From the IMG/VR virus record IMGVR_UViG_3300032334_001259, positions 248,001 through 312,000 of that record: DNA of 64,000 nt. One strand, given 5' to 3'. This document shows, in pieces, positions 6,554-64,000 of the stretch; within the stretch, counting starts at the first letter, position 1, and each line of letters opens with the position of its first letter. The notes below the pieces were generated by a model that saw nothing but the letters and a program-made list of their open reading frames with translations, was not told the origin of the DNA and did not search any database. The translations under genes were made by a program, and so were the position numbers.

Positions 6554-7309
6554 ATGAAGCGTAAACAAAAGTTACATCAAATGAACCCTAACGCACAAAG
6601 CCAAAACAGAAATTATAACAACATAACTCAAATAGAACAGTTCTTACCACAGAAGAAAAGAACAGTTGAAATTATTCCCAGAAATATAAATCAGGAAACC
6701 TATCTTGCACTGCTCATGGACCCATCTATGAGCATTATTATTGCAAGTGGACCTGCTGGCACGGGTAAAACACTGTTAGCTATGCAAGCTGCAATTAAAT
6801 TCCTTAAAGAACGCCAAATTGATAAAATTATTTTAACAAGACCAGCAGTTGGTGTTGAAGGTGAGCGTCATGGGTTTTTACCAGGTGATTTAGTACAAAA
6901 AATGGAACCTTGGACTAAACCACTATTTGATGTGCTACACGAGTATTATACCACACGTGATACACTTTCTATGATTGAAAATGGTGTTATTGAAATTTGT
7001 CCACTTGCTTTTATGCGTGGGAGAACTTTCAAAAATGCAGTAATCATCGCAGATGAAATGCAAAATGCAACACCAAATCAAATGAAAATGTTATTAACAC
7101 GTATTGGTGAAGGCAGTCGTATCATTGTAACAGGCGATGTTCGTCAGACCGACCGAACAGAAGGTGAGAACGGATTATTAGATTTCAACAAACTAATTAA
7201 CCAATTCCGCTCCAGCGCACATGTTGGCACCGTAGAATTTACAGGCAGTGATATTGAACGTCATCCAGCAGTAGAGGAGGTATTGCGAATATACGGTGAT
7301 ATCAAATAG
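6554..7309 (+). CDS. phoH: PhoH-like ATPase
   Basis: GPAGTGKT, TRPAV, GFLPG, RGRTF, DEMQN, TGDxxQ and RH motifs. Confidence 0.95.
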   Translation: MKRKQKLHQMNPNAQSQNRNYNNITQIEQFLPQKKRTVEIIPRNINQETYLALLMDPSMSIIIASGPAGTGKTLLAMQAAIKFLKERQIDKIILTRPAVGVEGERHGFLPGDLVQKMEPWTKPLFDVLHEYYTTRDTLSMIENGVIEICPLAFMRGRTFKNAVIIADEMQNATPNQMKMLLTRIGEGSRIIVTGDVRQTDRTEGENGLLDFNKLINQFRSSAHVGTVEFTGSDIERHPAVEEVLRIYGDIK

Positions 7310-24921: not shown

Positions 24922-25497
24922 TTATTTTAAAAGTTGTGAGAATATAAAGTGACAACTTATACGATTTTCAATTAGACCAATGTCACCTATCATTTCATGC
25001 CATTGGTCATAATCGTTAACTTGTAAGTAACCTGTATTCATTTCATAGGGAAAGAAATATTTTGGTTTAGTTTTTTCACGGTAATAATAAAATTTAGTTC
25101 CCAGATCATTATCACTTTCACTCAAATATACTTGCATACTGATGGGAATATTAAAATAACCTTTTTGTTCAACTTCTACAGGATCAAAGTCACGGTGTAT
25201 TGGACTTTTATATCCATGCATATCTCGCCATAAACTTACAATGGTTCTATCTGGATATTGGAATTGCCAATTTAATTTTTCTTGTAATTCTGCGGCAATA
25301 CCAATGCTTATTCTTTTAAGTTGCGATAACTCCTTGCAACTTTGAAGTTTTAGTAGTTTTCTTGGAAATTCTTCTTGTTTAAGTTGAACATCCCATTCGT
25401 AATCATCCCAATTTGCTGTTTTACAAAATTCTACAATTTCCTGTGGAAATACATCCGTAACACGATACAGATTGCTTGCCACAGGAATTATATTCAT
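24922..25497 (-). CDS. 2OG-Fe(II) oxygenase-like protein
   Basis: HxD (IHRD), QVYL, GTKFY, distal WH and RIS motifs. Confidence 0.65.
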   Translation of the reverse strand: MNIIPVASNLYRVTDVFPQEIVEFCKTANWDDYEWDVQLKQEEFPRKLLKLQSCKELSQLKRISIGIAAELQEKLNWQFQYPDRTIVSLWRDMHGYKSPIHRDFDPVEVEQKGYFNIPISMQVYLSESDNDLGTKFYYYREKTKPKYFFPYEMNTGYLQVNDYDQWHEMIGDIGLIENRISCHFIFSQLLK

Positions 25498-26333
25498 TGG
25501 TCGTCTTCTGGTTTCCAACCCTTACAAATTGCTTTTTTATTTTCTGCAACTGCTTTAAAATCTACTGGCCAAAGTGGTGGTTTGTTCAACTTATTTGTGC
25601 CAGGTGGAACTGGAATAGAAAGACCTGTTGCAGCTTCAAGGTCTGCAATAGTAACTTGAACTTTAGTTAAATCATTGCCTTGATTTTCTGCTTGTGGAAA
25701 TAAGAAAGCCAATACTTCATTTGTCTGTGTATCAATTACAACTTTCCATAACTTATTTGGAACAGTAACCTTATTATTACCTATTGTTTTATCTTTACCA
25801 ACTGTGTAGACATCACCTGCATATATTACAAGAGTATGTTTACGACTGAATGTCCAAGCGCCTGTTGAAGTTTCAAGCAACTTCCAAATACCACGATTAA
25901 GACCAGGCAATTGTGGACTCATATTACTCATCAAAAATGATTCATATTCAACTTGTTGATCCCAAGATTGGTGTGCATCATTTGCAATATGTCCTTGGTC
26001 ATAACCACTGCCAGCATAATCACTTGGTGTGCTACGCTTATCAGCAGGTAGTGCGGCATCAGCAACAAATGCGTTGGTGCGCTTTACACAACCATTTACA
26101 TGTTCTGGTGTAATGTTCCAAGCTGCCCATAATGGAATCTTTGCTGCATTGTCGTGCATAATAAAATAACCTTGACGGCAAAGTGGTGTAGTGTCATGCT
26201 TACCACTGGCTACAATTTCACCATATGGCATAAATGCTTTACATACTTTTGGGTCTTGGTTTGGACGTTGGTCCCAAGCTAGTGCTAGAGAAGGTAGCAT
26301 AATTGCTACAAGTGCAATGATAAGTTTTTTCAT
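25494..26333 (-). CDS. secreted DNA/RNA non-specific endonuclease (NucA/EndA/EndoG family)
   Basis: signal peptide (SLALA); YDQGHIA (DRGH-like), SF.MSNMSPQ..LNRG.W..LE and VP...WKV motifs. Confidence 0.9.
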   Translation of the reverse strand: MKKLIIALVAIMLPSLALAWDQRPNQDPKVCKAFMPYGEIVASGKHDTTPLCRQGYFIMHDNAAKIPLWAAWNITPEHVNGCVKRTNAFVADAALPADKRSTPSDYAGSGYDQGHIANDAHQSWDQQVEYESFLMSNMSPQLPGLNRGIWKLLETSTGAWTFSRKHTLVIYAGDVYTVGKDKTIGNNKVTVPNKLWKVVIDTQTNEVLAFLFPQAENQGNDLTKVQVTIADLEAATGLSIPVPPGTNKLNKPPLWPVDFKAVAENKKAICKGWKPEDDQ

Positions 26334-39702: not shown

Positions 39703-39716
39703 AATAAAAAAAATAA

Positions 39717-40497: not shown

Positions 40498-40545
40498 ATA
40501 ATTATTTATACAAAATAATTAAAAAGGTGCTTTTAACCTCTAAAT

Positions 40546-40619
40546 TGGTAGGCGATGACAGAATCGAACTGCCGTAGCCGCCGTGTAAAAGCGGAGTTTT
40601 ACCATTAAACTAATCGCCC
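40546..40619 (-). tRNA. tRNA-Val(UAC)
   Basis: anticodon arm CCGCT-TTTACAC-GGCGG; TTCGATT T-loop; CCA; TTGACA promoter upstream. Confidence 0.93.
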
Positions 40620-40640
40620 CAATAGTTTATATATATCATA

Positions 40641-42636: not shown

Positions 42637-42700
42637 TTTATATTTCCTTTTTGATTGTTATCAGTATTTACCATTCACCAACCTTCATATAAATATCATT

Positions 42701-43582
42701 ATGTGTGTTATAGTTGCAAAATATTTTGATAATGTAGGTTGGGTTGGTGTAAAAAATCGTGATCGCAACTATGTTCCTGATTTAAGTTTTCGTAAAAAGA
42801 AAAATAAAAATACAGAAGTATTATATTTTTGGGATGATATTACACAATACTGTGAAGGCATGAATGACAGCGGAGTTTGTGTGTTATCTGCAAGCCTTAT
42901 GGTGCTAGATGATGAAAAAGAAATCACTGTTCGCACCAAGACACCAAGCAAAGATGGCGTAAAGATTCAAAAGGCATTGCGACTAACTGATATTAAAGCA
43001 GTAGCAATGAGTTTAATTAAACAAAAGCTACCAGGATGCACAATTATATTTGATCGTGAAACTTGTTATCTACTTGAAGGTGCATGGGCACCTGGTGGAT
43101 ATGAAGATAAAGATTACAAATATAAGATAGAAGAAATACCACATGACGAAACTGTTGCAAGAACTAATCACGGCGTATGGTTAAAGTGGGCAGGATATCA
43201 ATATAGCAGTGATGACAGTGAAACTGCCAGTGCTATAAGCAGTCGCAGTCGTTTAATCATTGCAGAACATATTGCAAAAAATGCTGAAACACCTGCACAA
43301 CTTATTGATTGGTTAACTAAAAAATATGTTGATAACTGGCAATTAAATGCACTACGTCTTACAGATGAAAAGAAAATGATGCGAACAACAGCACAACTTA
43401 TGTTAGTTCCAAAAGAAAATACAATGTTTGTTCGTCCAATTCAAAGTAATATTACTTTTAATTTTTGGAAACTTAATGGTAGTGATAGTAAACTTTGGGT
43501 AGAATTATTAAGTAATCGTGTGCTACGCAGTGGTGAAGATGATCCAAGTATTCCTACTAATTTAGGTCATATCACAGACTAA
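42701..43582 (+). CDS. Ntn-hydrolase-fold protein (N-terminal Cys nucleophile)
   Basis: MC...KNRDR, EGMN..G, RTNHG and S.SR motifs; TAAATA ends 5 nt before the ATG. Confidence 0.65.
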   Translation: MCVIVAKYFDNVGWVGVKNRDRNYVPDLSFRKKKNKNTEVLYFWDDITQYCEGMNDSGVCVLSASLMVLDDEKEITVRTKTPSKDGVKIQKALRLTDIKAVAMSLIKQKLPGCTIIFDRETCYLLEGAWAPGGYEDKDYKYKIEEIPHDETVARTNHGVWLKWAGYQYSSDDSETASAISSRSRLIIAEHIAKNAETPAQLIDWLTKKYVDNWQLNALRLTDEKKMMRTTAQLMLVPKENTMFVRPIQSNITFNFWKLNGSDSKLWVELLSNRVLRSGEDDPSIPTNLGHITD

Positions 43583-43827
43583 ACTGGATGCCACATCATA
43601 CCCCAATCACTATCTACCCAACGTAGGGTAAAGTGAGTTGCATCTTCTGCTTTATCAAATTCAAAAACGACTTGAAATTTTCCTACAAGCGTTCCATCTT
43701 CAAAATATGAAAGTTCTGGATACTTAAAAACATAATTATTTTCAAGACAAAATCGTATCATTTCATCAATCCAATAATCTTTAGCTAAAACATGTTGATG
43801 TGGAATGTGAACTTTTACTTCTGTCAT
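43579..43827 (-). CDS. small protein, same paralogous family as 31.5-32.1 kb
   Basis: FEFDKAEDATHFTLRW. Confidence 0.65.
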   Translation of the reverse strand: MTEVKVHIPHQHVLAKDYWIDEMIRFCLENNYVFKYPELSYFEDGTLVGKFQVVFEFDKAEDATHFTLRWVDSDWGMMWHPV

Positions 43828-43843
43828 TTTAAAACTTTTTAAT

Positions 43844-43920
43844 TGGTGCCCACGGTCGGATTTGAACCGACACTGTGGCGATTTTAAGTCGCCTTTCTCT
43901 ACCTGTTGGAATACGTGGGC
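43844..43920 (-). tRNA. tRNA-Leu(UAA) with short variable loop
   Basis: GGCGA-CTTAAAA-TCGCC; 5-nt variable loop; GTCGG-TTCAAAT-CCGAC; A73; CCA. Confidence 0.92.
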
Positions 43921-43926
43921 ATTAAC

Positions 43927-44343
43927 TTAATCTACCACATCCATAGTGGCTTTACCTAATTCTTTATAACCTTTTGCAGTAGGATGGATTTTATCTTTAC
44001 TCAACCAATCTTTATGTAGTTTAATTGTGCCATCATTAAAATCTCTGGCAAGTGCTTCAATATATTCTATGGTTTCAGCACGAGTATCATTAGGTAGTAT
44101 CCAAATAACATATTGTGCGTCGATACGTTGACGGATCAACCAAAGATTTTCATGTGTGTGCATATCTTTAGAATCATTGGTGCTTAAACTTATAATAACA
44201 ATATTACTTGTCGGAAGTTTTGTGCTGTATGTCCCAAGAAAATCTTGTGAATTGATACCAACTTTAGCAATAGTCATGCAGTCACGACGAACATCACCAA
44301 GACCCTTTGCAATACTGTCACCTATAATCAAACAATCTATCAT
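43927..44343 (-). CDS. SGNH/GDSL hydrolase
   Basis: IIGDSIA, STND and D.IHPT.KGY motifs. Confidence 0.8.
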   Translation of the reverse strand: MIDCLIIGDSIAKGLGDVRRDCMTIAKVGINSQDFLGTYSTKLPTSNIVIISLSTNDSKDMHTHENLWLIRQRIDAQYVIWILPNDTRAETIEYIEALARDFNDGTIKLHKDWLSKDKIHPTAKGYKELGKATMDVVD

Positions 44344-44360
44344 AATACTTCCTTAATTTA

Positions 44361-44436
44361 TGGTAGGCGTGGCCCGACTCGAACGGACACTAGTGCTCTT
44401 ATGAGGAGCAGGTACTAACCATTATACGACACGCCC
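44361..44436 (-). tRNA. tRNA with CAU anticodon (Ile2 or elongator Met)
   Basis: TGCTC-CTCATAA-GAGCA; paired 1-72 and no GGG/CCC, so not an initiator; CCA. Confidence 0.9.
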
Positions 44437-47844: not shown

Positions 47845-49059
47845 ATGAATAATTGCAAACCACTTCGTAAATGTCTTTGCTGTGATAGTAATGACCTCAA
47901 ACTTACATTAGATTTAGGTTCTCAACCTCTTGCCAATAGTTTCAAGGCAACAGCAATAGAACGTGAAGAAACATATCCACTTGCTGTAAATTACTGTCCA
48001 CATTGCCATCATCTGCAATTAACCCATGCAGTTGATGCTAATATAATTTTTAAAGATTATGTATATGTAAGTGGAACATCACTTACTATGCAAGAATATT
48101 TTAAGTGGTTTGCTGCATTTGTTATGGAATATTTTCAAGATGTTCCGCCAAAGCGTGTGCTTGAAATTGGCTGTAATGATGGCACACAGTTAAACTATTT
48201 TAAGAAATATGGATTAGAAACGTGGGGCATTGATCCTGCGGAAAACATTTATCCAATCAGCAGCAAAAATCATAACATTATTTGTGACTTTTTATCTCAA
48301 CATGCTTTGGATAAACTCAAGCGTCCAGTAGATATTATATACGCACAAAATGTTTTTGCGCATCAAGACAATCCACAACAATTCCTTGAACTTTGCAAAT
48401 CTGTGATGAACCCTAACACACTGTTGTTCATACAGAATAGTCAAAGTGATATGATTCAAAATAATGAATTTGATACAATCTATCATGAACATAGAAATTT
48501 CTTTAGCATTAGTAGCCTTAATACCCTTGCTAACCATGTTGGACTACACCTTATTGATGTAGTAAAGGGTACAATTCACGGTGGTAGTAATATCTTTGTG
48601 TTCAGCATAGATGATGAATGTCCTGCACGTGTCAAGGGTTATATGGATTGGGAACGTATCCAAGGATTATATAATTACAAAACCTATCAGAATTGGGCAG
48701 ATGGTGCTAAACGTACAGTTAATGATTTAAGCATTGTGTTAGATGCACAGCGCAAAGCACACAATCGTGTGATTGTAGGTTATGGTGCGCCAGCCAAAGG
48801 TAATACGCTATTGAACTTTGGTAATATATCACTTGATTTTATTATAGATGATAATCCATTAAAGCAACACAAATATACACCTGGTATGAGTATTCCTGTT
48901 GTTCCTATTGAACACTTACAGAAGTATGTTGGTGTAGACATTTGTTTTGTGCCGCTTGCATGGAACTTTTTTGATGAAATTGTAGATCGTCTTAAAAAGG
49001 TTCGTAATAATAGTGGTGATGTATTTGTAAGATACTTTCCAAGTATCCAGATACAATAA
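47845..49059 (+). CDS. NDP-sugar C-methyltransferase-like
   Basis: Zn-binding C..C/C..C, LGSQPLAN, EIGCNDG, NVFAH, FDTIYHEH, HGGS and YGAPAKG.TLL motifs. Confidence 0.9.
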   Translation: MNNCKPLRKCLCCDSNDLKLTLDLGSQPLANSFKATAIEREETYPLAVNYCPHCHHLQLTHAVDANIIFKDYVYVSGTSLTMQEYFKWFAAFVMEYFQDVPPKRVLEIGCNDGTQLNYFKKYGLETWGIDPAENIYPISSKNHNIICDFLSQHALDKLKRPVDIIYAQNVFAHQDNPQQFLELCKSVMNPNTLLFIQNSQSDMIQNNEFDTIYHEHRNFFSISSLNTLANHVGLHLIDVVKGTIHGGSNIFVFSIDDECPARVKGYMDWERIQGLYNYKTYQNWADGAKRTVNDLSIVLDAQRKAHNRVIVGYGAPAKGNTLLNFGNISLDFIIDDNPLKQHKYTPGMSIPVVPIEHLQKYVGVDICFVPLAWNFFDEIVDRLKKVRNNSGDVFVRYFPSIQIQ

Positions 49060-56064: not shown

Positions 56065-58110
56065 TTACTTGGTGCTGGTTCTGTAAACAGTATCCCAACC
56101 AGCGCCTGGTGGGTTTGCAGCCATTTCTTCACAACGTTCAATCCACATATCATAATATCCATCCATTTGCCCGTCAAATTGACCTTTAATTTTTTTACAA
56201 ATTTCTATTGCACTTGTAAATCTTTGAGCACGATAGTCATCCATCATGTGTTTATGATTAGTTTTAGCAGCAAGATATGCAATTCTATCACTGCGTTGTT
56301 CTAATACTGTAAAGATATCAACACCTTCTTTTTTACCTTTAACCGCAATGCAGTCTAATTCAAGTGTAAAGTAATCATCTTTTACATATTCATTTGTCTT
56401 TGGTCCAATAACCATAGCAACATGATATGGTTTACTTTGCCCTTCTAAACGTGAAGCAAGATTAACGCCATCACCAAGACAAGTATAATCAAATCGCTGG
56501 CTACTACCCATGTTACCAACGACGACAGTAGCAGTGTTGATACCAAGTCCCATTCCAAAAGGTGGGACTCCCTCTTTGGCAACTTCTTCATTAAACGCAT
56601 TTAAACTTCCTAACATTTGTAGTGCTGTCTTTACAGCGTTCTTGGCATGATCTGCATCATCAAGTGGTGCGTTCCAAAATGCCATTTGTGCATCACCGAT
56701 ATATTTGTCAAGTGTGCCTTCATTCTCTAATATCTTAGCAGTCATCGCTGTCATATAGCGGTTCATTATTTTGGTAAGACCTTGAACGTCACTACCGTAA
56801 TGCTCAGAAATGCTAGTAAAACCCCTAACATCGGTAAATATAATTGATAACTCACGTGACTCTCCTCCCAATGCTAATAGTTCTGGATTCTTTTGAAGTT
56901 TTTCAACCATTGCAGGTGAAAGATAAGTTCCAAATTGTTTCTTTATTTGTTGCTTTTGTAAGAACTCACTGACGAACTTAACACCGTAGGCATGCAAAGC
57001 GACCAAGATGATTCCAGCAACAGGAGCGGTTGCGTCCCATAACTGTAAAGCGTGATTAAACTGATAGAAAGAAAAAGCAATACTGCCGCCGACCAATACA
57101 ATAACCGAACCAAGCCCAACATATACCCACCTCGTCAAGAATAATAATAACAGTCCACCAATTACGAGTGCAATAAGTTCTGCACCTTCTGCATAACTTG
57201 GACGTTCAATGTTAACCTTATTTGCCAACGTAGCAATAATCTTTGCTTGTATATCTTGTGGATATACTGCACCAACAGCAGTAGGAACAGGGTTTGCAAT
57301 ACCAGCAGCACTAACACCAACAATAACAATTGCGCCATCAAACTTTTCTGGCATATTTGTAACGCTTACTTGTTTGTGTTGTTGACTTAAATCAATCCAT
57401 ACACGACCTAAACTATCAGTTGTGAATATATTTTTACCAATACCAAGTTTATCAATTCCAAGTTCATTTAACTTAACTTTCATATTCTTTTCATTATAAA
57501 GAACACGAAGTGTTTCAAGACCGATTGTAGGATAAAGTTTACCACCACTGCCAACAAGCAGCGGAATACGACGATTAACACCATCTATTTCAGGAAATAC
57601 GTTTGTTGTTCCAACACCAATTGCACTATTTTCTAAATCTGGAATGTTGGCAATAACACCAGGATAATTGTAAATTCTATCAATAAAATTACTGTTGACA
57701 ATGGCGGCACCATTTGGGCGTGGTGTGTTCTTGCCTACGCTACTTGGAATATTACTTAAAATTACTGGATGATTTTTAAGAGTTTCAGCAAGTGCAGCGT
57801 CACCACCTTGGCGGTCTGCTTCTGGCATTAACACTGTCCAAACAACAATGCTTGCACCACGTGCATAAATGTCGTTAATTATATCCGCATATATCTGTCT
57901 ATTAAACGGCCATTGTCCATACTTGTTAAGTGCGGCTTCATCAATATTAACTGTATAAATTGGGTTTTCAGTTTGTGTTTTATTTGTGATAAGTTGGTCA
58001 AAGTATTTTAACTTGACGCTTTCAACAAATGTAGGTGATGAAACTTTTATGGCAACTACGATTGCCAATGTTATGAGTGCAGTCCATGGGCTTAATAGAA
58101 TTTTTTTCAT
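56065..58110 (-). CDS. CHASE2-domain class III adenylate cyclase
   Basis: N-terminal TM; IDE..L..YGQWPF.R and D.DGV.RR CHASE2 motifs; three TMs; FTDVRGFT, DKYIGDA and YTCLGDGVNLASRLEG; start revised to 58110. Confidence 0.93.
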   Translation of the reverse strand: MKKILLSPWTALITLAIVVAIKVSSPTFVESVKLKYFDQLITNKTQTENPIYTVNIDEAALNKYGQWPFNRQIYADIINDIYARGASIVVWTVLMPEADRQGGDAALAETLKNHPVILSNIPSSVGKNTPRPNGAAIVNSNFIDRIYNYPGVIANIPDLENSAIGVGTTNVFPEIDGVNRRIPLLVGSGGKLYPTIGLETLRVLYNEKNMKVKLNELGIDKLGIGKNIFTTDSLGRVWIDLSQQHKQVSVTNMPEKFDGAIVIVGVSAAGIANPVPTAVGAVYPQDIQAKIIATLANKVNIERPSYAEGAELIALVIGGLLLLFLTRWVYVGLGSVIVLVGGSIAFSFYQFNHALQLWDATAPVAGIILVALHAYGVKFVSEFLQKQQIKKQFGTYLSPAMVEKLQKNPELLALGGESRELSIIFTDVRGFTSISEHYGSDVQGLTKIMNRYMTAMTAKILENEGTLDKYIGDAQMAFWNAPLDDADHAKNAVKTALQMLGSLNAFNEEVAKEGVPPFGMGLGINTATVVVGNMGSSQRFDYTCLGDGVNLASRLEGQSKPYHVAMVIGPKTNEYVKDDYFTLELDCIAVKGKKEGVDIFTVLEQRSDRIAYLAAKTNHKHMMDDYRAQRFTSAIEICKKIKGQFDGQMDGYYDMWIERCEEMAANPPGAGWDTVYRTSTK

Positions 58111-58127
58111 GGTAATATTTACCCAAG

Positions 58128-58156
58128 AAAAAACCCCGTAAATTTCTTTACGGGGT
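58128..58156 (-). terminator. intrinsic terminator after the GHKL gene
   Basis: stem ACCCCGTAAA/TTTACGGGGT followed by a U-tract. Confidence 0.8.
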
Positions 58157-58165
58157 CTTATTAAA

Positions 58166-60043
58166 TTAAAATTCAAAGACTTTTTCTAAATTATCAGAAA
58201 TTAAAATACCATCTTCAATTTCTTTAACTTTTACTTTAAGTTGCTTTGTGCAGTCAGTTAAATCATAAATTAAACTATCCGCATGAGTAGTAAGTGAAAC
58301 TGGGTGCAATGCCTTTTCAATTTCTTCTTGATCATACCCAATTCGTTTCTTTTTTGCCATTGAGTAAACCACCGCACGAGTAACTAACCATGCCATTTCA
58401 TTAGATGCAATTTCTTTTGCTGCATCTTTTATTTTTTCAAATATTTCTTCTTCTCTGGTTTGATATTCTGCAACTAGTTCTTCTACTGCCTTATCTACAA
58501 CTTCATACATGCAATTTACATAAATTGCCTGATCTTCAATATATTCTGCAGCACGATGTTCTAAACTTGTAGCACTTGCTTTTTCTAAATCATCTTCTGT
58601 TCTAATAAATTGAATTGCAGGCACTGTGGCGGCAATTTGAAAATTACTGCCTGGCACATATGGAATTTGTTTTGTTTTAGGACTTTTTACAGCGTTGAAA
58701 CTATTGCCAGCACCTTTTTTCTTACTAGGTGCCAAGAATCCTGTTTGCCCTTTATCTCTTGTTACGGTAACCATAAGTTCATCAAGTAATTGTTGTGCAC
58801 GTTTAGTAATATCTTCACTACTGACATTTGATGGTGCATATTCTCTAATTTTTTCTTTAAACCATTCAGGCATATTTTCACGAATTTCACGTGCATATTC
58901 TAACATTTGAATTTCAGTTTTTTCAGCATTTGGTTTTAATATTTTTTGACGATACTGATCTGGTTGTACATTGCTTTCGTCTGGCAACTCAACAAAAATG
59001 CGAAAATATCTAGCACTGTATAAAACACCTAATGCACCTGCAATCTTTTTCCATTTACTATCAGTTGCAACATCATAAATTTCATTTTTATAAACAAGAC
59101 CACTAAAGGAAGCAACAGTAGCATAACCTAATGCAGTAGTAGTTGGTTTATCTTGGTTAGCATATCCTGAAAAACCACTTGGACCATCATAAACATACCA
59201 AATTTTTATACCACTTCCATTTTTGTCATTAACAAATTCTTGAATAACCTTATCGGGTTTTGACATAGAAGTATGTGTAATATGTTCTAAAATTGTTAAG
59301 AATCGTATATTAAGATGTTTATGTTTTGAAAAACCAACTTCTAATCGCAAACTGACGGTATTTGGAATTCGGAAAAAACGACGATACATTTGATTGATTA
59401 ACCATGCACTAGGTTTCTGTTCTTCACCATCATAGGGACGTTCAACCGTATTTTGATTAGGATTATTACCACAAAGCACAATTGCTGTCCAATCTTCATT
59501 GGTATCCCATGGTATTGTTGCAAGTCCAGTAATATCCCAAACATCCTTATACCCAGTTGGACTTTCACCATCTGTTTCTACAAAATCATAACGGCAATAA
59601 TTTGCTTGTCCTTTGCTATTAATTTCTTTTCGTAAAAGTGAAATGGAAACTTTCTTATTCTTACATGAAATCCAAATCATTCCTTCTTGATTTACACCCA
59701 TTGCTGTAACTTTTGCGCCGATACCAAAATTTTGATCAAGGCGTTGAATTTTGTTGAGTGATGATGATAAATTAGTAACTTCTCGCAATTCTTTGGCAGA
59801 CATACCAGTGCCATTATTCCAGAAAGTAAGTTTTTTTATATTAAAACCAAAATCACCAAAAACATTTTCGTTAAATCCAAAAACAGAAGGATCAGTTTCT
59901 AGTATTTGAATTTTTGGTTCTTTTGCTGTGATAGATGCTTCAATGGAATTTTGAATTAATTCTCGTATCATCATTTCACTTGGGGCTTGTTCAATTGTAC
60001 GAGTAATAAGATAAGACGTATTTGTAACGTTTAATGCAGTCAT
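58166..60043 (-). CDS. GHKL (HSP90/MORC-like) ATPase protein
   Basis: IRELIQNS, NNGTGMS, NFGIGAK and WT motifs; AAGGA SD. Confidence 0.75.
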   Translation of the reverse strand: MTALNVTNTSYLITRTIEQAPSEMMIRELIQNSIEASITAKEPKIQILETDPSVFGFNENVFGDFGFNIKKLTFWNNGTGMSAKELREVTNLSSSLNKIQRLDQNFGIGAKVTAMGVNQEGMIWISCKNKKVSISLLRKEINSKGQANYCRYDFVETDGESPTGYKDVWDITGLATIPWDTNEDWTAIVLCGNNPNQNTVERPYDGEEQKPSAWLINQMYRRFFRIPNTVSLRLEVGFSKHKHLNIRFLTILEHITHTSMSKPDKVIQEFVNDKNGSGIKIWYVYDGPSGFSGYANQDKPTTTALGYATVASFSGLVYKNEIYDVATDSKWKKIAGALGVLYSARYFRIFVELPDESNVQPDQYRQKILKPNAEKTEIQMLEYAREIRENMPEWFKEKIREYAPSNVSSEDITKRAQQLLDELMVTVTRDKGQTGFLAPSKKKGAGNSFNAVKSPKTKQIPYVPGSNFQIAATVPAIQFIRTEDDLEKASATSLEHRAAEYIEDQAIYVNCMYEVVDKAVEELVAEYQTREEEIFEKIKDAAKEIASNEMAWLVTRAVVYSMAKKKRIGYDQEEIEKALHPVSLTTHADSLIYDLTDCTKQLKVKVKEIEDGILISDNLEKVFEF

Positions 60044-60158
60044 AATGTTTTCCTTTTATAAGTTCTTAAAACTAACCAACTATGTGGTAACTATGTTTTA
60101 GGTAATAATACTTATTATACACACTCTGCATAAAAAAATAAAATTAATTTTTTTAAAA

Positions 60159-60292
60159 AAGTGCGGGTAGGATTTATACCTACAATTTGATGGTATTAAC
60201 AAGCTACAGATTTAACAGACCCTTGCTTTCTAGTTCCTTTATTTCCATCATGCCGATACTCCAATACGTGTCCTGCCCACGCCGCCGCACTT
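60159..60292 (-). ncRNA. tRNA-shaped ncRNA with enlarged central arm
   Basis: 8-bp terminal stem, D-like and T-like arms, inner TGATGG/CCATCA helix, own promoter, U-tract. Confidence 0.6.
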
Positions 60293-60297
60293 ATCTC

Positions 60298-60326
60298 TTT
60301 ATATATTATTGTATTAGTGCTGTCAA
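60298..60326 (-). promoter_or_regulatory. sigma70 promoter of the tRNA-like RNA
   Basis: TTGACA-17-TATAAA; RNA stem begins 5 nt later. Confidence 0.7.
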
Positions 60327-61324
60327 TGTATTTGTTGTAAGTTTTTTAAAAAACTATTTGTGCATTTTTCCCAAGTATAATCTTTGCTTATTTTATGTAC
60401 ATTTTTGCGATTACAGTCTAGTGCATATTCAATGGCAATTTGTAAATTGTCATCCATAGCACCATTTACACCATTTATTATAATATCAGTTGGACCTGTA
60501 ACTGGATATGCTGCAATTGGTGTTCCACATGCCATTGCTTCTAACATTACCACACCAAAGGTATCAGTCTTACTTGGAAATACAAATACATCTGAGTTAG
60601 CATAATATTCAGCAAGTGCATCACCATGTTTATAACCTGTAAAAATTACGTCGTTATATTTCTTTTTTAATTCTGCCAAGTATGGACCATCACCAACTAA
60701 TATTTTTGTTCCGTCAGTTTTTAGACTGCAAAAATCATCTAAACCTTTTTCTATGCTTGCACGACTTACGCAAAGTAATATAGGTTTAGTTGCTTGATTT
60801 GACTTACGTTTTTTGGGATTAAATATTTTAGTATCAACTCCACGATTCCATACAGCAAGACGTTCAAATCCACGTCCTTGTAATTCTTGTCGCATAGTTT
60901 CATTTGTAACTAAAACCCGTGTGCTAAACTTATGAAACCAACGAATAAACCAATAACCCCAATCTACGGGTATATTAAAATATTTGTTAAAGTATTCTGG
61001 AAATTTTGTATGATAACTTGTGTTATGTGGAATACTGCGCTTATCTACTTTGCAATACCAACGTGCGGCAAATCCTAATGGACCCTCTGTAGCAATATGA
61101 ATAGCATCTGGCTTAAACGATTCAATCATGGGACCAACACGCCAAATATTAAGTGTAAGTTTTATTTCTGGATAACCTGGCGCTGGCACAGTCTTAAATT
61201 GACTAGGTTCAATAACCTGAACTATATGTCCAAGTCGTTCTAACTCTGCAACAGTGTTTATAAGAGTTGTAACAACACCATTTACACTTGGTGCGTATGT
61301 ATCAGTTACCAGTGAGATTCGCAT
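60323..61324 (-). CDS. GT4 glycosyltransferase, Agt-like glycolipid synthase
   Basis: VTDTY.P.VNGVV.TL, YPEI, HIATEGPLG, SYHTKFPEY, EKG and SKTDTFGVVMLEAMACG motifs. Confidence 0.85.
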   Translation of the reverse strand: MRISLVTDTYAPSVNGVVTTLINTVAELERLGHIVQVIEPSQFKTVPAPGYPEIKLTLNIWRVGPMIESFKPDAIHIATEGPLGFAARWYCKVDKRSIPHNTSYHTKFPEYFNKYFNIPVDWGYWFIRWFHKFSTRVLVTNETMRQELQGRGFERLAVWNRGVDTKIFNPKKRKSNQATKPILLCVSRASIEKGLDDFCSLKTDGTKILVGDGPYLAELKKKYNDVIFTGYKHGDALAEYYANSDVFVFPSKTDTFGVVMLEAMACGTPIAAYPVTGPTDIIINGVNGAMDDNLQIAIEYALDCNRKNVHKISKDYTWEKCTNSFLKNLQQIH

Positions 61325-62051
61325 TTTTATATTTAATTATAAACCAATGACCATTATAATCTTCAACTAATGCTGTGCAACTTTCAACCCAATCACCGCA
61401 ATTCATATATTTTATATCACCTATTTCACGTATATTTGCGTGATGTATATGTCCGCATATAATTCCATTTGCACCACGTGTTCTCGCAAAACTAGCAAGA
61501 TTATCTTCAAAATCACCAATAAAGTTTACTGCCTTTTTAACTTTATATTTTGCCCAAGCACTTAAACTCCAATATGGTAACTTAAATAAATTTCTAATTC
61601 TTGCTATAACAACATTTAATGCAATTGTTAAATCATATGCCCAACTACCAATATGACTTAACCATTTCATATTTTTAATAACAACATCAAACTGGTCTCC
61701 ATGCATAACAATATATTTTTTACCATCTAAGCTGGCATGTGTAATATTATCCACGAGACAAATATTACCAAAGCTATACTCTCCAAATGTTCGTAAAAAT
61801 TCATCGTGATTTCCTGGCAAATAATAGACTTGAACGCCTTTTCTTGCCAAACGCATAAGTTTTTGGATTACATCATTATGATGTTGCGGCCAGTAAAAAC
61901 TTTTAGCCATTGCCCAACCATCAATTATGTCACCAACAAGATACAGACGTTCACACTCAAAAGTTTTAATAAATTCAAGCAAATCATTTGCTTGACTCAT
62001 ACGAGTGCCTAAATGCACATCGCTTATAAAGACACTACGATAATAATTCAT
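61302..62051 (-). CDS. metallophosphoesterase, PlcP-like phospholipase C (LpxH family)
   Basis: SDVHLG, GDIIDGW, WPQ.HNDV.QK, GNHD, HGDQFD, YWSLS, CGHIH and GDWVESCTAL motifs. Confidence 0.85.
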   Translation of the reverse strand: MNYYRSVFISDVHLGTRMSQANDLLEFIKTFECERLYLVGDIIDGWAMAKSFYWPQHHNDVIQKLMRLARKGVQVYYLPGNHDEFLRTFGEYSFGNICLVDNITHASLDGKKYIVMHGDQFDVVIKNMKWLSHIGSWAYDLTIALNVVIARIRNLFKLPYWSLSAWAKYKVKKAVNFIGDFEDNLASFARTRGANGIICGHIHHANIREIGDIKYMNCGDWVESCTALVEDYNGHWFIIKYKNANLTGN

Positions 62052-62095
62052 ATAAAATATTTACCTGACCATTTATGTAAGTTTTATGATGCTTT

Positions 62096-62626
62096 TTAGT
62101 GTTTAGTATAAGAATAACCACTACAAGGAGGAGTTAAACATTGTATATTCATATTGCTACTATCTGGTGTATTAAGGTTATCTTGCACAACAGTTGCACC
62201 AATATCACTACCACTCAAATTAAGAACAAAACTTTTATTAGCATCGCCAGTTTGGGTAATACTTGCATTATTATTGTTGTTTTGTGTTGTAGCATCCAAA
62301 TTAATGGCGGCAGTATGATTACCGCTACCATTTTGTAAAATAGTAAGTGTGTTGTTATTGTTATTTGAAGCATTTGTATTAGTATTGTAAGTCCCATCAT
62401 AATTTTTTCCTACTGGTGGTGTTCCAATAAAAGCAAGATGATCTCCGCTTCCTTCTTGAACTATTGTATGATTATTACTATCGCCTTTGTTTAGTAGAAT
62501 TGCTTCACTATTTCCACTTGAACTTTGGTCTAGGTAAAAAATATTTCCATTTCCAACTTGATCAATATAAACACTGCCTGCGTAACAAGGTGTGGTAATC
62601 ATTAGTAAGAATAATAATTTTTTCAT
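62096..62626 (-). CDS. secreted curlin-like repeat protein
   Basis: signal peptide; repeated x-Q-x-G-x-x-N units; Asn/Gln/Gly-rich. Confidence 0.65.
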   Translation of the reverse strand: MKKLLFLLMITTPCYAGSVYIDQVGNGNIFYLDQSSSGNSEAILLNKGDSNNHTIVQEGSGDHLAFIGTPPVGKNYDGTYNTNTNASNNNNNTLTILQNGSGNHTAAINLDATTQNNNNNASITQTGDANKSFVLNLSGSDIGATVVQDNLNTPDSSNMNIQCLTPPCSGYSYTKH

Positions 62627-63741
62627 TGTGATTGTGCAATCCTTATCAAGCTACCGCCAGCATGTTGAACATTTTGAATAAGTGTAGTTCCATCTTGTGT
62701 TAATTGTATAGTTGTTGCACTATCCTTATCAACTCCAATTTGGCTAAAACTATTTGCGCCAACACGATATAGCACAACGGTTTGGTCTTGTTTATAATAT
62801 AATAAACCAGCAGCTTTATTAGGTTTATAATTTGGCAACATTTGATTTTCACCACCCAACATACTTTCAAGTAGTGCAGCATTTAGCAAGTCAAGTTGAT
62901 TTACCAATAATACAGAATCAAGTTGGTTAATATCAAGTTTGTTGAATCCCATAAGATAATTCATATCAAGTTCATCAAACTTTAGAAAATCTTTATCAAG
63001 AAAATTAATATCAAGTGCAGTTTTTTGTGTTGTTTCATTTTCTGCTGATTTCTTTGGTGGGGTTAAAATTAACATATTATTAATTTGTTCTTGATTTAAC
63101 ACAAGTATAACGGGTTTAGTTGGATTCTGTTCTTTTGCACTTGTAGTTGTTGCTTGAAATGGTTTATCAAGATGAACTGTACCCATATCAGTAGTGACAT
63201 CAATCTTTCCAGTAACACAATCTTTTTCAATATTTTTGTAACCTACAGGACAGCTTGGCAACAGAACTACAAGACTGCGACCTAATTCATCAACTGTCAT
63301 ACTAAAGTCAGTTCCACGAACACCAATGACAGCAGTTGGTGTTTCAATTTTAACTTGCTGTGGATTTTCTTTTGCTATTTGTCCACTGGCATAGGTTGCA
63401 GTTCCAATAGCAACTTTAATACCAAGTTTGCTTGCACTTGCATTATTTGGATCATATACAAAGTCATCAATTACAAGTTTACTTTGTTCAGTGATTTGCA
63501 CTTTGGTATCATCTTCGAAAGTAATACCTACACGTGCACGAGCGGTGACAACGGCATCATTCATTTCAACGCCGCTGTTCACCGCACTTGGTATACTTTC
63601 TTTATCTCGTTGAATTTCAGTTGGTCCAGTTTGTTCAGTTACTTTACCAACAGCCGCCCAACAATCAGTTACTGCTGTTAACAGTAATACTGTTGTTAGA
63701 ACCGTTGCTCTTGATATCAACTTTACTATCGATTGTGCCAC
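62623..63741 (-). CDS. FecR-domain periplasmic protein
   Basis: signal/TM segment; F.DDT.V.I.E.S.L.ID.FVYD and ETPTAVIGVRGTDF motifs; exact start uncertain. Confidence 0.85.
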   Translation of the reverse strand: MAQSIVKLISRATVLTTVLLLTAVTDCWAAVGKVTEQTGPTEIQRDKESIPSAVNSGVEMNDAVVTARARVGITFEDDTKVQITEQSKLVIDDFVYDPNNASASKLGIKVAIGTATYASGQIAKENPQQVKIETPTAVIGVRGTDFSMTVDELGRSLVVLLPSCPVGYKNIEKDCVTGKIDVTTDMGTVHLDKPFQATTTSAKEQNPTKPVILVLNQEQINNMLILTPPKKSAENETTQKTALDINFLDKDFLKFDELDMNYLMGFNKLDINQLDSVLLVNQLDLLNAALLESMLGGENQMLPNYKPNKAAGLLYYKQDQTVVLYRVGANSFSQIGVDKDSATTIQLTQDGTTLIQNVQHAGGSLIRIAQSQ

Positions 63742-64000
63742 CTTGTGTCACTCCAACGTTATTTGAACTACCTGTTACATCAACTTTTGCATCAAAACCA
63801 GTAGCGCCAGCAGGACCACTTTGTTGAACGCTTACTACATTACTGTCACCAGTTGCTTTAATATCAGCCTTTGCACCTAACATATTAGTAGTGCTACTGT
63901 TGATACTTGCATTATTATTGTCACCAGTTACAGCAATACCCATAGTGCTTTTTGCACTTGCAGTCACACTTAATGTATTTCCACTACCAGTTGCGTTTGC
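63665..64000 (-). CDS. curlin-like repeat protein (C-terminal part; starts outside window)
   Basis: frame open to the window edge; repeats V.G..NN..I.Q / QQSG / TQGG. Confidence 0.65.
   Translation of the reverse strand, partial: ANATGSGNTLSVTASAKSTMGIAVTGDNNNASINSSTTNMLGAKADIKATGDSNVVSVQQSGPAGATGFDAKVDVTGSSNNVGVTQGGTIDSKVDIKSNGSNNSITVNSSN

What the first reader, a model, noticed from the sequence alone, without database searches (positions are those of the whole stretch)
60323..62051. Phage-encoded PlcP-Agt-like pair: possible viral phospholipid-to-glycolipid remodelling
Seen: two overlapping genes behind a TAAATA motif, a metallophosphoesterase (GDIIDGW, WPQ.HNDV.QK, YWSLS, GDWVESCTAL) and a GT4 enzyme (VNGVV.TL, YPEI, HIATEGPLG, YHT.FPEY). 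Known: these motifs and this gene order match alphaproteobacterial PlcP, a phospholipase C often mis-annotated as LpxH, and Agt, which glycosylates DAG. Together they replace phospholipids with glycolipids under phosphate starvation. Inference: the phage frees membrane phosphate for replicating a very large genome and/or alters the envelope against superinfection. PhoH and a secreted nuclease in the same window fit a phosphorus-scavenging theme.
Basis: partly seen in the sequence, partly recalled or inferred. Interest (0 to 1): 0.85.

Follow-up and report, generated by a model that had tools for sequence, protein, structure and literature searches.

The report
Phage-borne PlcP–Agt lipid-remodelling gene pair
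A complete 338-kb freshwater jumbo phage carries intact copies of the two bacterial enzymes that swap membrane phospholipids for phosphorus-free glycolipids, so this gene (usually mislabelled "LpxH") looks like a widespread, so far unrecognised kind of viral host-metabolism gene.

Summary
Two minus-strand genes overlap by 23 nt: a 249-aa metallophosphoesterase (61302-62051) and a 333-aa GT4 glycosyltransferase (60323-61324).

The record is a real phage. It is 338,435 bp with 123-bp terminal repeats, a T4-type capsid gene and a terminase. Independent lake metagenomes hold the same gene order.

The phosphoesterase belongs to the PlcP family and is not LpxH:
- It scores 59 and 51 bits against LpxH cut-offs of 134 and 190.
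- It has GNHD where all LpxH sequences fetched have the LpxH-specific GNRD.
- It is separated from LpxH on a tree with 100% support.
- It is 52-59% identical to alphaproteobacterial plcP genes that sit directly upstream of agt.

The GT4 keeps the published Agt/GTcp signature (His105, Arg161, Asp254, Trp318, FPSxTDTFG). It is 44-50% identical to agt homologues in named bacteria.

Both genes are under purifying selection (dN/dS about 0.1). More than 580 IMG/VR stretches encode PlcP relatives. In those contigs the gene often lies next to ribonucleotide reductase, pstS, phoH or a nuclease. Pelagibacter phage Mosig also has one, annotated as LpxH.

The most likely function is phospholipid-to-glycolipid conversion in infected cells to free phosphorus. 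Envelope remodelling is the main rival, because in this phage the pair lies beside a curli-like gene cluster. No activity has been measured.

The parts
61302..62051 (-). plcP-like gene: 249-aa Mn-type metallophosphoesterase with a helical insertion, PlcP family (phospholipase C type), not LpxH
   Evidence: ORF. Pfam Metallophos. LpxH equivalog models score only 59 and 51 bits against cut-offs of 134 and 190. GNHD instead of the LpxH motif GNRD, with the metal ligands D11 H13 D41 N81 H117 H201 H203 kept. Trees. AlphaFold model pLDDT 83.6 with a helical insertion at 118-191. Best PDB fold matches are LpxH at TM about 0.55 and 21-24% identity.
60323..61324 (-). agt-like gene: 333-aa GT4 (GT-B) glycosyltransferase of the Agt/GTcp diacylglycerol glycosyltransferase clade
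   Evidence: ORF. Pfam Glyco_transf_4 plus Glycos_transf_1. H105, R161, D254, W318, FPSKTDTFG and SRASIEKG are conserved across 122 homologues and match the GTcp residues in bioRxiv 10.1101/2021.03.25.437072. It is 44-50% identical to the single strong homologue in five named proteobacterial genomes; where a second GT4 matched (Rhizobium, G001) it scored only 41 bits.
61302..61324 (-). 23-nt overlap of the plcP 3' end with the agt 5' end (compact, possibly translationally coupled pair)
   Evidence: The same overlap is seen in relative L083 (about 19 nt in the tblastn alignment). Bacterial pairs have spacers of 43-260 nt.
62058..62063 (-). TAAATA motif 6 nt upstream of the plcP start codon (phage promoter-like motif resembling the T4 late-promoter core)
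   Evidence: Sequence. Genome-wide enrichment of 97 of 374 upstream regions against 5.8 expected. Preferred distances to the start codon are 5-9 and 15-24 nt.
61330..61335 (-). second TAAATA motif, 5 nt upstream of the agt start codon, inside the plcP 3' end
60160..60292 (-). structured, G+C-richer element with a closing stem and a U6 tail just downstream of the agt stop; possible terminator of the pair's transcript
   Evidence: Sequence. Fold of -37.2 kcal/mol, z -1.8. No Rfam family matches. Related strains diverge from the window to the left of 60325.
6554..7309 (+). PhoH-like gene, part of the phage's phosphorus-related gene set, not adjacent to the pair
   Evidence: PF02562, E 1e-70.
25494..26333 (-). 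secreted DNA/RNA non-specific endonuclease; its homologue lies directly next to plcP in related phage contigs
   Evidence: Endonuclease_NS, E 4e-43. Signal peptide. Adjacent to plcP in L090, L093, L106, L107 and L144.

Best explanation
The two genes are a phage-encoded copy of the bacterial PlcP-Agt membrane lipid-renovation pathway. PlcP is a cytoplasmic, membrane-associated Mn-dependent metallophosphoesterase. It would cut the phosphorylated head group off host glycerophospholipids (PE, PG, PC), leaving diacylglycerol. Agt, made from the overlapping downstream gene, would transfer glucose or glucuronate from the host's UDP-sugars onto that diacylglycerol. This yields phosphorus-free glycolipids (MGDG, GADG) that keep the bilayer intact. 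The released phospho-head groups would enter the cell's phosphorus pool. They would then feed nucleotide synthesis for phage DNA, alongside the phage's own PstS, PhoH, secreted nuclease and ribonucleotide reductase. Expression appears to be driven by the phage's own TAAATA-type motif and not by a host Pho box.

Shown here: gene integrity, viral origin, family membership by sequence, conserved catalytic residues, purifying selection, and wide occurrence in related phages.

Inferred: the substrates, the products, the timing of expression, and the phosphorus benefit.
For: Viral origin. The record is 338,435 bp with a 123-bp direct terminal repeat, 374 ORFs and 94% coding. It has a Gp23 capsid gene (E 8e-99) and a terminase. 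Its capsid protein is 74% identical to that of Sinorhizobium phage Phosso and 70% to PA5oct. Contigs from other lakes carry agt-plcP-curlin-FecR in the same order at about 93% identity.

PlcP and not LpxH:
- The protein fails both LpxH equivalog cut-offs.
- All 195 PlcP-like proteins have GNHD, and the 13 true LpxH sequences read have GNRD. Arg80 is the LpxH-specific substitution (PMC5016852).
- The LpxH clade is split off with 100% support.
- Five sampled genomes hold both a true LpxH and a PlcP-like paralogue.
- Five named genomes with a PlcP homologue (four named Alphaproteobacteria, one unclassified Pseudomonadota MAG) have only one homologue of the query each.
- Identity to Hyphomicrobiales plcP is 52-59%. 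Characterised PlcPs share 46-51% with one another.

Agt. The GTcp catalytic dyad, UDP-sugar motifs and DAG-binding Arg and Trp are conserved. The gene is 47% identical to the only strong homologue in an Agrobacterium genome.

Pair. agt lies directly downstream of plcP in 53 of 78 bacterial loci and 29 of 75 viral loci. The plcP-agt operon was proven by knockout in Methylosinus (PMC9239053).

Selection. dN/dS is 0.08-0.17 against L083 and L084.

Phosphorus context. PstS is present elsewhere in this genome, as are PhoH and a secreted nuclease. In related phage contigs plcP sits next to NrdA/NrdB, PstS, the nuclease or PhoH. In the cultured pelagiphage Mosig it sits next to a pstS-like gene.
Against: - No enzymatic or lipidomic data exist for any phage copy.
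- No RNA run was listed that holds the genes.
- There is no Pho box upstream, so a link to phosphate stress is not visible in the regulation.
- In this phage and its closest relatives the immediate neighbours are not phosphorus genes. They are a curli-like envelope cluster (CsgG, CsgF, curlin-repeat and FecR-like proteins) and a CHASE2 adenylate cyclase.
- PlcP releases phospho-head groups, not free phosphate. A phosphatase is still needed and none was identified in the phage.
- No UDP-glucose dehydrogenase or UDP-sugar pyrophosphorylase is encoded.
- 46 of 75 related viral loci carry plcP without an adjacent agt.
- The characterised reference proteins were not in my trees.
Confidence: 0.62

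Rival explanations
1. The chemistry is the same (phospholipid to glycolipid), but the purpose is envelope remodelling and not phosphorus supply. The pair would be the last two genes of a phage envelope programme. It would change the membrane or surface of the infected cell to block superinfection, alter receptors or vesiculation, or support export of curli-like fibres.
For: All genes upstream on the same strand are envelope proteins: a curlin-repeat protein at 62096-62626, a FecR-like secreted protein at 62623-63741, a second curlin-repeat ORF at 63665-63967, and CsgG just beyond the window at C1:312401-313021. The nearest relatives keep CsgF-CsgG-FecR-curlin-plcP-agt plus a CHASE2 cyclase. 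There is no Pho box. Membrane lipid composition is reported to affect phage adsorption in Ruegeria (PMC9938194, listed).
Against: In more distant relatives and in pelagiphage Mosig, plcP sits with RNR, pstS, phoH or a nuclease and not with envelope genes. The phage also carries pstS and phoH. Gene adjacency in a mosaic phage genome is weak evidence either way.
Confidence: 0.22
2. PlcP acts mainly as a late, membrane-degrading phospholipase that helps lysis or host shut-down. Glycolipid synthesis by Agt would be secondary.
For: The TAAATA motif resembles the T4 late-promoter core. 46 of 75 related viral loci have plcP without an adjacent agt.
Against: In this phage agt overlaps plcP and is under equally strong purifying selection. 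That points to a coupled two-step pathway which repairs the bilayer and does not destroy it. The family has no known lytic role. The timing of expression is not established.
Confidence: 0.07
3. The first gene is a genuine LpxH and the GT4 is an LPS or cell-wall glycosyltransferase, so the pair is a lipid A / LPS auxiliary gene set as current annotations state.
For: JGI names the homologues 'UDP-2,3-diacylglucosamine pyrophosphatase LpxH' and 'glycosyltransferase involved in cell wall biosynthesis'. The best solved-structure matches are LpxH.
Against: The protein scores far below both LpxH equivalog cut-offs. It lacks the LpxH-specific Arg of GNRD. It is separated from LpxH by a long, 100%-supported branch. 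It coexists with true LpxH as a paralogue in five sampled genomes. The GT4 carries the DAG-glycosyltransferase signature.
Confidence: 0.03
4. The segment is bacterial DNA joined to a phage contig by mis-assembly, or the record is not viral.
For: The neighbouring genes (CHASE2 cyclase, FecR, curlin repeats) look cellular.
Against: The source run holds the whole 5.9-kb stretch in one 101,653-bp contig. Independent lake samples hold agt-plcP-curlin-FecR contiguously. G+C content is uniform. The same neighbours recur in IMG/VR and ENA phage contigs. 68 of 80 viral loci share further genes with this genome, against 0 of 80 bacterial loci. The genome has terminal repeats and phage hallmark genes.
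Confidence: 0.02

Closest known systems
PlcP, the intracellular phospholipase C of phosphate-starved bacteria (S. meliloti SMc00171, Phaeobacter MED193_17359, Pelagibacter HTCC7211 PB7211_983, P. aeruginosa PA3219, M. trichosporium OB3b)
   Same: Same length of about 250 aa. Metallophosphoesterase with all seven metal ligands and GNHD. Has an LpxH-like helical insertion. Lies immediately upstream of agt. It is 52-59% identical to Hyphomicrobiales family members, a range equal to or above that among characterised PlcPs (46-51%).
   Different: Encoded by a phage. No Pho box was found; a phage TAAATA motif sits upstream instead. Overlaps agt by 23 nt. Sits in an all-viral clade outside the sampled alphaproteobacterial clade. 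Activity is untested.
Agt / GTcp, the GT4 diacylglycerol glucosyl/glucuronosyl transferase (A. tumefaciens Atu2297, Pelagibacter HTCC7211 PB7211_960 = WP_008545403.1, P. aeruginosa PA3218)
   Same: 333 aa against 334 aa. His-Asp dyad, FPSxTDTFG, an (G/S)R(V/A)(A/S)xEK motif, and the DAG-binding Arg and Trp. Positioned downstream of plcP. It is 44-50% identical to bacterial members.
   Different: The Thr162 equivalent is Asn160, although this position varies across the family. The first UDP-sugar motif reads SRASIEKG and not GRVAxEKN. The sugar donor range is unknown. The genome is viral.
LpxH (UDP-2,3-diacylglucosamine diphosphatase of lipid A synthesis)
   Same: Same fold and domain plan (MPE core plus helical insertion). 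It is the best solved-structure match. It is the name under which these phage genes are currently annotated.
   Different: About 21-26% identity only. His and not the LpxH-specific Arg80. Below the curated HMM cut-offs. Forms a separate clade. It is a paralogue in genomes that have both.
Phosphate-stress auxiliary genes of aquatic phages (pstS, phoA, phoH of cyanophages and pelagiphages)
   Same: A host-derived gene carried by T4-like aquatic phages and plausibly easing phosphorus limitation of phage DNA synthesis. It co-occurs with pstS and phoH, both in this genome and next to plcP in relatives.
   Different: It would mobilise the cell's own membrane phosphorus and not external phosphate. 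In the paper library searched it is not described as a viral lipid-remodelling gene.
'Putative UDP-2,3-diacylglucosamine hydrolase' of Pelagibacter phage Mosig EXVC030M (Mosig_00120) and of Synechococcus phage S-SRM01
   Same: PlcP-like, with GNHD (Mosig) or GNHE (S-SRM01). They are 46% and 34% identical to the window protein. Both are carried by cultured T4-like aquatic phages. Mosig's copy lies next to a pstS-like gene and S-SRM01's lies in the psbA/hli island.
   Different: No adjacent agt in either. Smaller genomes (141 and 241 kb). Mosig falls in a different viral PlcP clade.

Membership tests
PlcP (phospholipase C-type metallophosphoesterase of lipid remodelling) | Calcineurin-like metallophosphoesterase core with the seven metal-binding residues intact | tested here: met
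   Pfam Metallophos, E 7e-14. D11, H13, D41, N81, H117, H201 and H203 are conserved and shared with LpxH.
PlcP (phospholipase C-type metallophosphoesterase of lipid remodelling) | Canonical GNH(D/E) histidine and not the LpxH-specific arginine | tested here: met
   GNHD at 80-83. All 195 PlcP-like rows have GNHD and all 13 LpxH rows read have GNRD. Arg80 is stated to be unique to LpxH in PMC5016852.
PlcP (phospholipase C-type metallophosphoesterase of lipid remodelling) | Groups with PlcP-type proteins and apart from LpxH on a tree | tested here: met
   FastTree of 209 rows and IQ-TREE mixture model of 100 rows both split off LpxH with 100% support. The PlcP side holds Rhizobium, Agrobacterium, Bradyrhizobium and Methylobacterium homologues. 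The characterised proteins themselves were not available.
PlcP (phospholipase C-type metallophosphoesterase of lipid remodelling) | Gene lies directly upstream of a non-phosphorus-lipid synthesis gene (agt) | tested here: met
   agt overlaps the plcP 3' end. The same order is seen in 53 of 78 bacterial loci. This is the type 2 arrangement of PMC4796936.
PlcP (phospholipase C-type metallophosphoesterase of lipid remodelling) | Pho-regulon control (Pho box upstream) | tested here: not met
   The consensus search gave 6 matches in the window against 7.3 expected, and none lies upstream of plcP. This feature is typical of bacterial copies and does not define the enzyme family.
PlcP (phospholipase C-type metallophosphoesterase of lipid remodelling) | Mn-dependent hydrolysis of PE, PG or PC to diacylglycerol | not testable with these tools
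   Needs an enzyme assay or lipidomics.
Agt / GTcp clade of GT4 diacylglycerol glycosyltransferases | GT4 GT-B architecture | tested here: met
   Glyco_transf_4 at residues 14-166 and Glycos_transf_1 at 173-290.
Agt / GTcp clade of GT4 diacylglycerol glycosyltransferases | Catalytic dyad His104-Asp256 (GTcp numbering) | tested here: met
   H105 is invariant in 122 of 122 rows and D254 is present in 118 of 122. The dyad is defined in bioRxiv 10.1101/2021.03.25.437072.
Agt / GTcp clade of GT4 diacylglycerol glycosyltransferases | UDP-sugar motifs GRVAxEKN and FPSxTDTFG | tested here: met
   FPSKTDTFG is an exact match. The first motif reads SRASIEKG, with R188, E192 and K193 invariant.
Agt / GTcp clade of GT4 diacylglycerol glycosyltransferases | DAG-binding residues Thr162, Arg163 and Trp320 | tested here: inconclusive
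   R161 (117 of 122 rows) and W318 (121 of 122) are present. The Thr162 equivalent is Asn160, a position that varies (S, P, T) across the family.
Agt / GTcp clade of GT4 diacylglycerol glycosyltransferases | 40-58% identity within the clade and under about 25-30% to other GT4 enzymes | tested here: met
   44-50% identity to the single strong homologue in five named genomes, including Agrobacterium (47%) and Roseibium (44%). The next GT4 in the Rhizobium genome scores 41 bits against 309.
Agt / GTcp clade of GT4 diacylglycerol glycosyltransferases | Synthesis of MGDG and/or GADG from DAG and UDP-sugar | not testable with these tools
   Needs expression and lipid mass spectrometry.
LpxH (lipid A pathway) | Score above the curated equivalog cut-offs (NF003743, TIGR01854) | tested here: not met
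   59.2 bits against 134, and 51.4 bits against 190.35.
LpxH (lipid A pathway) | Arg80 (GNRD) binding the lipid X phosphate | tested here: not met
   His82 occupies this position.

The most novel reading that the evidence does not exclude
Lipid renovation is a common viral strategy in lakes and oceans. The genes counted as viral 'lpxH / LPS biosynthesis' auxiliary genes would in fact be PlcP. Phages would actively convert the phospholipids of infected cells into glycolipids, so part of the environmental MGDG/GADG signal and of bacterial phosphorus turnover would be virus-driven. In this jumbo-phage lineage the pair may also belong to a wider phage-run envelope programme with a curli-like secretion module and a CHASE2 cyclase.
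Probability: 0.4. Interest if true: 0.8.

Novelty: new variant of a known kind. Interest (0 to 1): 0.66.

Why it matters
If the pair works as predicted, it adds a new class to the phosphorus-related auxiliary genes of phages. That class mines the host's own membrane and does not import phosphate.

It would correct a systematic mis-annotation. Viral 'lpxH' is filed under LPS biosynthesis in virome surveys (PMC10653327 and PMC9611531) and in the GenBank records of phages Mosig and S-SRM01.

It would also mean that viral infection, and not only phosphate starvation, can shift bacterial membranes from phospholipids to glycolipids. Such a shift could affect phosphorus budgets, lipid biomarkers, and the properties that depend on membrane composition, such as grazing susceptibility, antibiotic tolerance and phage adsorption.

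The prediction is directly testable, because expression in E. coli followed by lipidomics is a published gain-of-function assay for Agt enzymes (PMC4796936, PMC8528852).

Tried and rejected
- Megablast of 58000-64000 against GenBank phages found no match.
- Cluster look-up for organism names returned no names or accessions.
It was repeated through a genome handle, but those handles carry no taxonomy, so Pelagibacter genomes could not be singled out.
- The Pho box consensus with up to 3 mismatches gave only chance-level matches, none of them upstream of plcP.
- A sigma-70 and terminator scan of 59800-64000 gave nothing above the shuffled controls.
- Rfam found nothing for the structured element after agt.
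- No RNA sequencing run was listed that holds the genes, so there is no expression evidence.
- UDP-glucose dehydrogenase and NTP_transferase families were not found in the phage genome.
- The PlcP mutagenesis paper (PMC6052262) is not held, and the JBC 2026 PlcP paper contains no residue-level terms. PlcP-specific catalytic residues therefore rest on the general metallophosphoesterase and LpxH literature.
- Five literature searches pairing PlcP or lipid remodelling with viral or phage terms found no paper describing a virus-encoded PlcP. A search for 'lpxH' with auxiliary metabolic genes and phage found papers that mention lpxH (three were opened; two list it as a viral gene under LPS biosynthesis), but none identifies it as PlcP.
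- I considered and rejected true LpxH, mis-assembly, and cellular contamination of the IMG/VR hits. The reasons are given under the rival explanations.
Full report
OBSERVATION. The two genes exist as described. On the minus strand, 61302-62051 encodes 249 aa and 60323-61324 encodes 333 aa, and they overlap by 23 nt. Pfam assigns the first protein to Metallophos and the second to Glyco_transf_4 plus Glycos_transf_1. A TAAATA hexamer lies 6 nt before the plcP start codon, and another lies 5 nt before the agt start codon. The hexamer occurs in 97 of 374 upstream regions of the genome against 5.8 expected from its genome-wide frequency. Extended forms such as CATAAATA and TATAAATA are 23- to 29-fold enriched. 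It is therefore a real recurrent signal that resembles the T4 late-promoter core. Its role as a promoter is not shown.

THE CONTIG IS A PHAGE AND THE REGION IS CORRECTLY ASSEMBLED. The window is bases 248001-312000 of a single 338,435-bp IMG/VR virus record. CheckV rates it 100% complete. It has a 123-bp direct terminal repeat, about 374 ORFs and 94% coding density.
- It encodes a T4-type major capsid protein (Gp23, E 8e-99) and a large terminase.
- The capsid protein is 74% identical to that of Sinorhizobium phage Phosso. It is 70% identical to Pseudomonas phage PA5oct and 65-70% identical to Vibrio, Erwinia, Serratia and Cronobacter jumbo phages. This is a jumbo myovirus, probably of a proteobacterial host.
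- The DNA is found in lake and freshwater metagenomes from several studies.
- One run holds the whole 5.9-kb stretch in a single 101,653-bp contig with no differences. This is probably the source sample.
- Two other lake samples hold contigs of 5.4 and 4.9 kb that cover agt, plcP, the curlin-like gene and the FecR-like gene in the same order at about 93% identity.
- Within 4 kb of their plcP gene, 68 of 80 IMG/VR loci share at least one further gene with this genome. None of 80 bacterial loci does.
Mis-assembly and cellular contamination are thus excluded for practical purposes.

THE PHOSPHOESTERASE IS PlcP-TYPE, NOT LpxH. Six lines of evidence agree.
1. The two curated LpxH equivalog models score 59 and 51 bits where 134 and 190 are required.
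2. Okada et al. (PMC5016852) state that the histidine of the metallophosphoesterase GNH motif is replaced by arginine (Arg80) only in LpxH, where it binds the lipid X phosphate. The window protein has GNHD. So do all 195 PlcP-like proteins I collected, whereas the 13 true LpxH sequences read from Pseudomonadota genomes all have GNRD. The seven metal ligands are intact.
3. On a 209-row FastTree and a 100-row IQ-TREE mixture-model tree, LpxH is split from the PlcP-like proteins with 100% support across a very long branch.
4. The two families are paralogues. Five sampled genomes carry both a true LpxH and a PlcP-like gene at different loci. Rhizobium, Agrobacterium, Rhodopseudomonas and Roseibium genomes each have a single homologue of the query. 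In the Rhizobium genome (G001), the only one of them also searched with the LpxH model, there was no match at E 1e-20.
5. The nearest named cellular proteins are from Hyphomicrobiales (Bradyrhizobium, Rhodopseudomonas, Methylobacterium, Rhizobium, Agrobacterium) at 52-59% identity. Experimentally characterised PlcPs share 46-51% identity with one another (PMC9239053 and PMC8528852).
6. An AlphaFold model (pLDDT 83.6) shows the metallophosphoesterase core with a helical insertion at residues 118-191. The best solved matches are LpxH structures at TM about 0.55 and 21-24% identity. This fits a lipid-handling paralogue of LpxH. Okada et al. described the same pattern for P. aeruginosa 'LpxH2', whose substrate they inferred to be something other than UDP-diacylglucosamine.

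THE GT4 IS Agt/GTcp-TYPE. The biochemical study of the Pelagibacter HTCC7211 enzyme GTcp (334 aa) defines several features: a His104-Asp256 dyad, the UDP-sugar motifs GRVAxEKN and FPSxTDTFG, a Gly-rich motif, and the activity-critical residues His104, Thr162, Arg163 and Trp320.
- The window protein (333 aa) has H105, D254, R161 and W318, an exact FPSKTDTFG, SRASIEKG, and HIATEGPLG.
- These positions are invariant or nearly so in 122 homologues.
- Only the Thr162 equivalent differs (Asn160), and that position varies across the family.
- In five named genomes the protein finds one strong homologue each, at 44-50% identity. In Agrobacterium (47%) and Rhizobium (46%) it is unlinked to plcP, which fits agt and plcP carrying separate locus tags in A. 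tumefaciens.
- The next-best GT4 in the Rhizobium genome scores 41 bits against 309. The clade is therefore sharply delimited, as the GTcp authors reported.

THE PAIR AND ITS SPREAD.
- agt lies directly downstream of plcP in 53 of 78 alphaproteobacterial loci, with spacers of 43-260 nt. It does so in 29 of 75 viral loci, with spacings from a 19-nt overlap to a 175-nt gap.
- The window PlcP sits in an all-viral clade of 39 sequences (99% support). Its nearest relatives are L083 (78% identity) and L084 (74%), and both carry the same agt at 79-81% identity.
- dN/dS against these relatives is 0.08-0.17 for both genes, so both are maintained by selection in phages.
The protein database holds thousands of metagenomic relatives.
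- Among 50,697 GenBank phage records, only Pelagibacter phage Mosig EXVC030M (46% identity), Synechococcus phage S-SRM01 (34%, two records) and one unannotated faecal contig have a PlcP homologue. The annotated ones are all labelled as LpxH.
- No GenBank phage record has an Agt-clade GT4; the best match is 33%.
- No sampled cellular genome exceeds 59% identity. The sampled alphaproteobacterial PlcPs form one clade (98% support) that excludes the viral ones. The viral genes therefore look like an old, self-sustaining viral lineage. The donor cannot be named, because only Pseudomonadota were sampled.

CONTEXT: TWO THEMES.
The phosphorus theme is supported as follows.
- The genome also encodes PstS (C1:94968-95723), PhoH and a signal-peptide-bearing non-specific endonuclease.
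- In related phage contigs plcP lies directly beside PstS (L100, L101, L116, L117). It lies beside that endonuclease in L090, L093, L106, L107 and L144, and beside PhoH in L129 and L131.
- Most often it lies beside ribonucleotide reductase NrdA/NrdB, in up to 14 of 80 loci.
- In the cultured pelagiphage Mosig it is divergently adjacent to a 'putative phosphate ABC transporter'. In S-SRM01 it lies in the psbA/hli auxiliary-gene island.
The envelope theme is supported as follows.
- In this phage and its nearest relatives, the genes upstream on the same strand are a curlin-repeat protein, a FecR-like protein, a second curlin-repeat ORF and CsgG. Relatives also have CsgF.
- A CHASE2 adenylate cyclase lies nearby.

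REGULATION. No Pho box is present, and TAAATA motifs precede both genes. A 130-nt structured element ending in U6 follows agt, and related strains diverge beyond it. The pair therefore appears to be under phage control. The temporal class is an inference from the resemblance to the T4 late promoter.

MECHANISM PROPOSED. PlcP has no signal peptide, so it would act at the cytoplasmic face of the membrane. It would hydrolyse host glycerophospholipids to diacylglycerol plus phospho-head groups. Agt would use host UDP-glucose or UDP-glucuronate to convert diacylglycerol into MGDG or GADG; no UDP-sugar genes were found in the phage. This mirrors the pathway demonstrated in Sinorhizobium, Phaeobacter, Pelagibacter, Pseudomonas and Methylosinus.

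As a rough estimate of my own, one phage genome contains about 677,000 phosphorus atoms (2 x 338,435). A small aquatic Gram-negative cell has on the order of a few million phospholipid molecules. Membrane phosphorus would then equal only a handful of genomes. That is small in absolute terms but significant for a jumbo phage in phosphate-poor water. The benefit is inferred. A phosphatase step that frees phosphate from the head groups is required and was not identified in the phage.

WHAT IS KNOWN. Five searches of about 8.4 million full texts that paired PlcP or lipid remodelling with viral or phage terms found no description of a virus-encoded PlcP or lipid-remodelling auxiliary gene. A further search for viral 'lpxH' found virome surveys that list it under LPS biosynthesis. 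The Mosig genome announcement does not mention the gene. Papers outside that library cannot be excluded. The enzymes are ordinary members of known families. The new element is their carriage by phages as a selected pair, and their wide spread in viral contigs.

LIMITS.
- There are no activity or expression data.
- The characterised reference proteins could not be imported.
- Cellular sampling was restricted to Pseudomonadota.
- The host is unknown.
- The large tree used FastTree and the 100-row tree used a short IQ-TREE search.

Noticed in passing
window 62096-63967 (-) and beyond the window at G000:C1:312401-313021 (-); relatives L224-L226: The phage carries a curli-like module: CsgG (E 5e-46), two curlin-repeat ORFs and a FecR-like secreted protein. 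Relatives also have CsgF. A phage-encoded curli-type secretion and fibre system would be unusual in its own right.
   Followed up: partly
window 56065-58176 (-): A 703-aa CHASE2 sensor fused to an adenylate/guanylate cyclase domain. It is conserved at 50-84% identity near plcP in related phage contigs (L084, L096, L113, L224). This may be a phage-encoded cyclic-nucleotide signalling enzyme.
   Followed up: partly
window 60160-60292 (-): A G+C-richer structured element of about 130 nt with a 6-bp closing stem followed by U6, directly after the agt stop. No Rfam family matches and the fold z-score is -1.8. Related strains diverge from the window to the left of 60325.
   Followed up: partly
whole genome G000; examples at window 49068, 49986, 52407, 61324, 62051: TAAATA (extended forms C/A/T-ATAAATA) occurs upstream of about a quarter of all ORFs, at preferred distances of 5-9 and 15-24 nt from the start codon. 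A second enriched upstream word, GCTTGACA / CTTGACAA, looks like a sigma-70 -35 box and may mark early promoters.
   Followed up: partly
G000:C1:94968-95723 (+), outside the window: A PstS-like periplasmic phosphate-binding protein (PBP_like_2, E 1e-35) is encoded by the same phage. Its homologues lie directly next to plcP in L100, L101, L116 and L117.
   Followed up: partly
GenBank MT647606.1 94129-94866 (L220) and MW015081.1 210536-211240 (L221): The 'UDP-2,3-diacylglucosamine hydrolase/diphosphatase' genes of the cultured phages Pelagibacter phage Mosig and Synechococcus phage S-SRM01 have GNHD and GNHE, not GNRD. They group with PlcP and are probably mis-annotated.
   Followed up: partly
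window 58166-60043 (-): A 625-aa protein with an N-terminal HATPase_c_3 (GHKL ATPase) domain lies between the cyclase and agt. The region is absent or different in the related strains seen in other lakes, so it looks like a variable insertion.
   Followed up: no
window 827-3964 (-): A 744-aa ClpA/ClpB-like double AAA+ protein (phrog_4871, E 1e-246) is followed by a full-length DnaJ (J domain plus C-terminal domain). The phage carries its own chaperone set.
   Followed up: no
window 38739-44436 (-): Five tRNA genes (Arg-TCT, Ser-GCT, Val-TAC, Leu-TAA, Met-CAT) are interspersed with small ORFs.
   Followed up: no
window 22657-23775 (-) and 47845-49059 (+): A radical SAM protein lies in the lowest-G+C stretch of the window (27%). 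A three-domain C-methyltransferase (Methyltransf_13/23/14) is also present. They may be sugar or nucleotide modification genes.
   Followed up: no
window 32161-33432 (-) and 12220-16059 (-): An RNA ligase / tail-fibre attachment catalyst homologue (phrog_562, E 1e-73) and a 1279-aa protein with a domain shared with giant virion structural and baseplate proteins.
   Followed up: no
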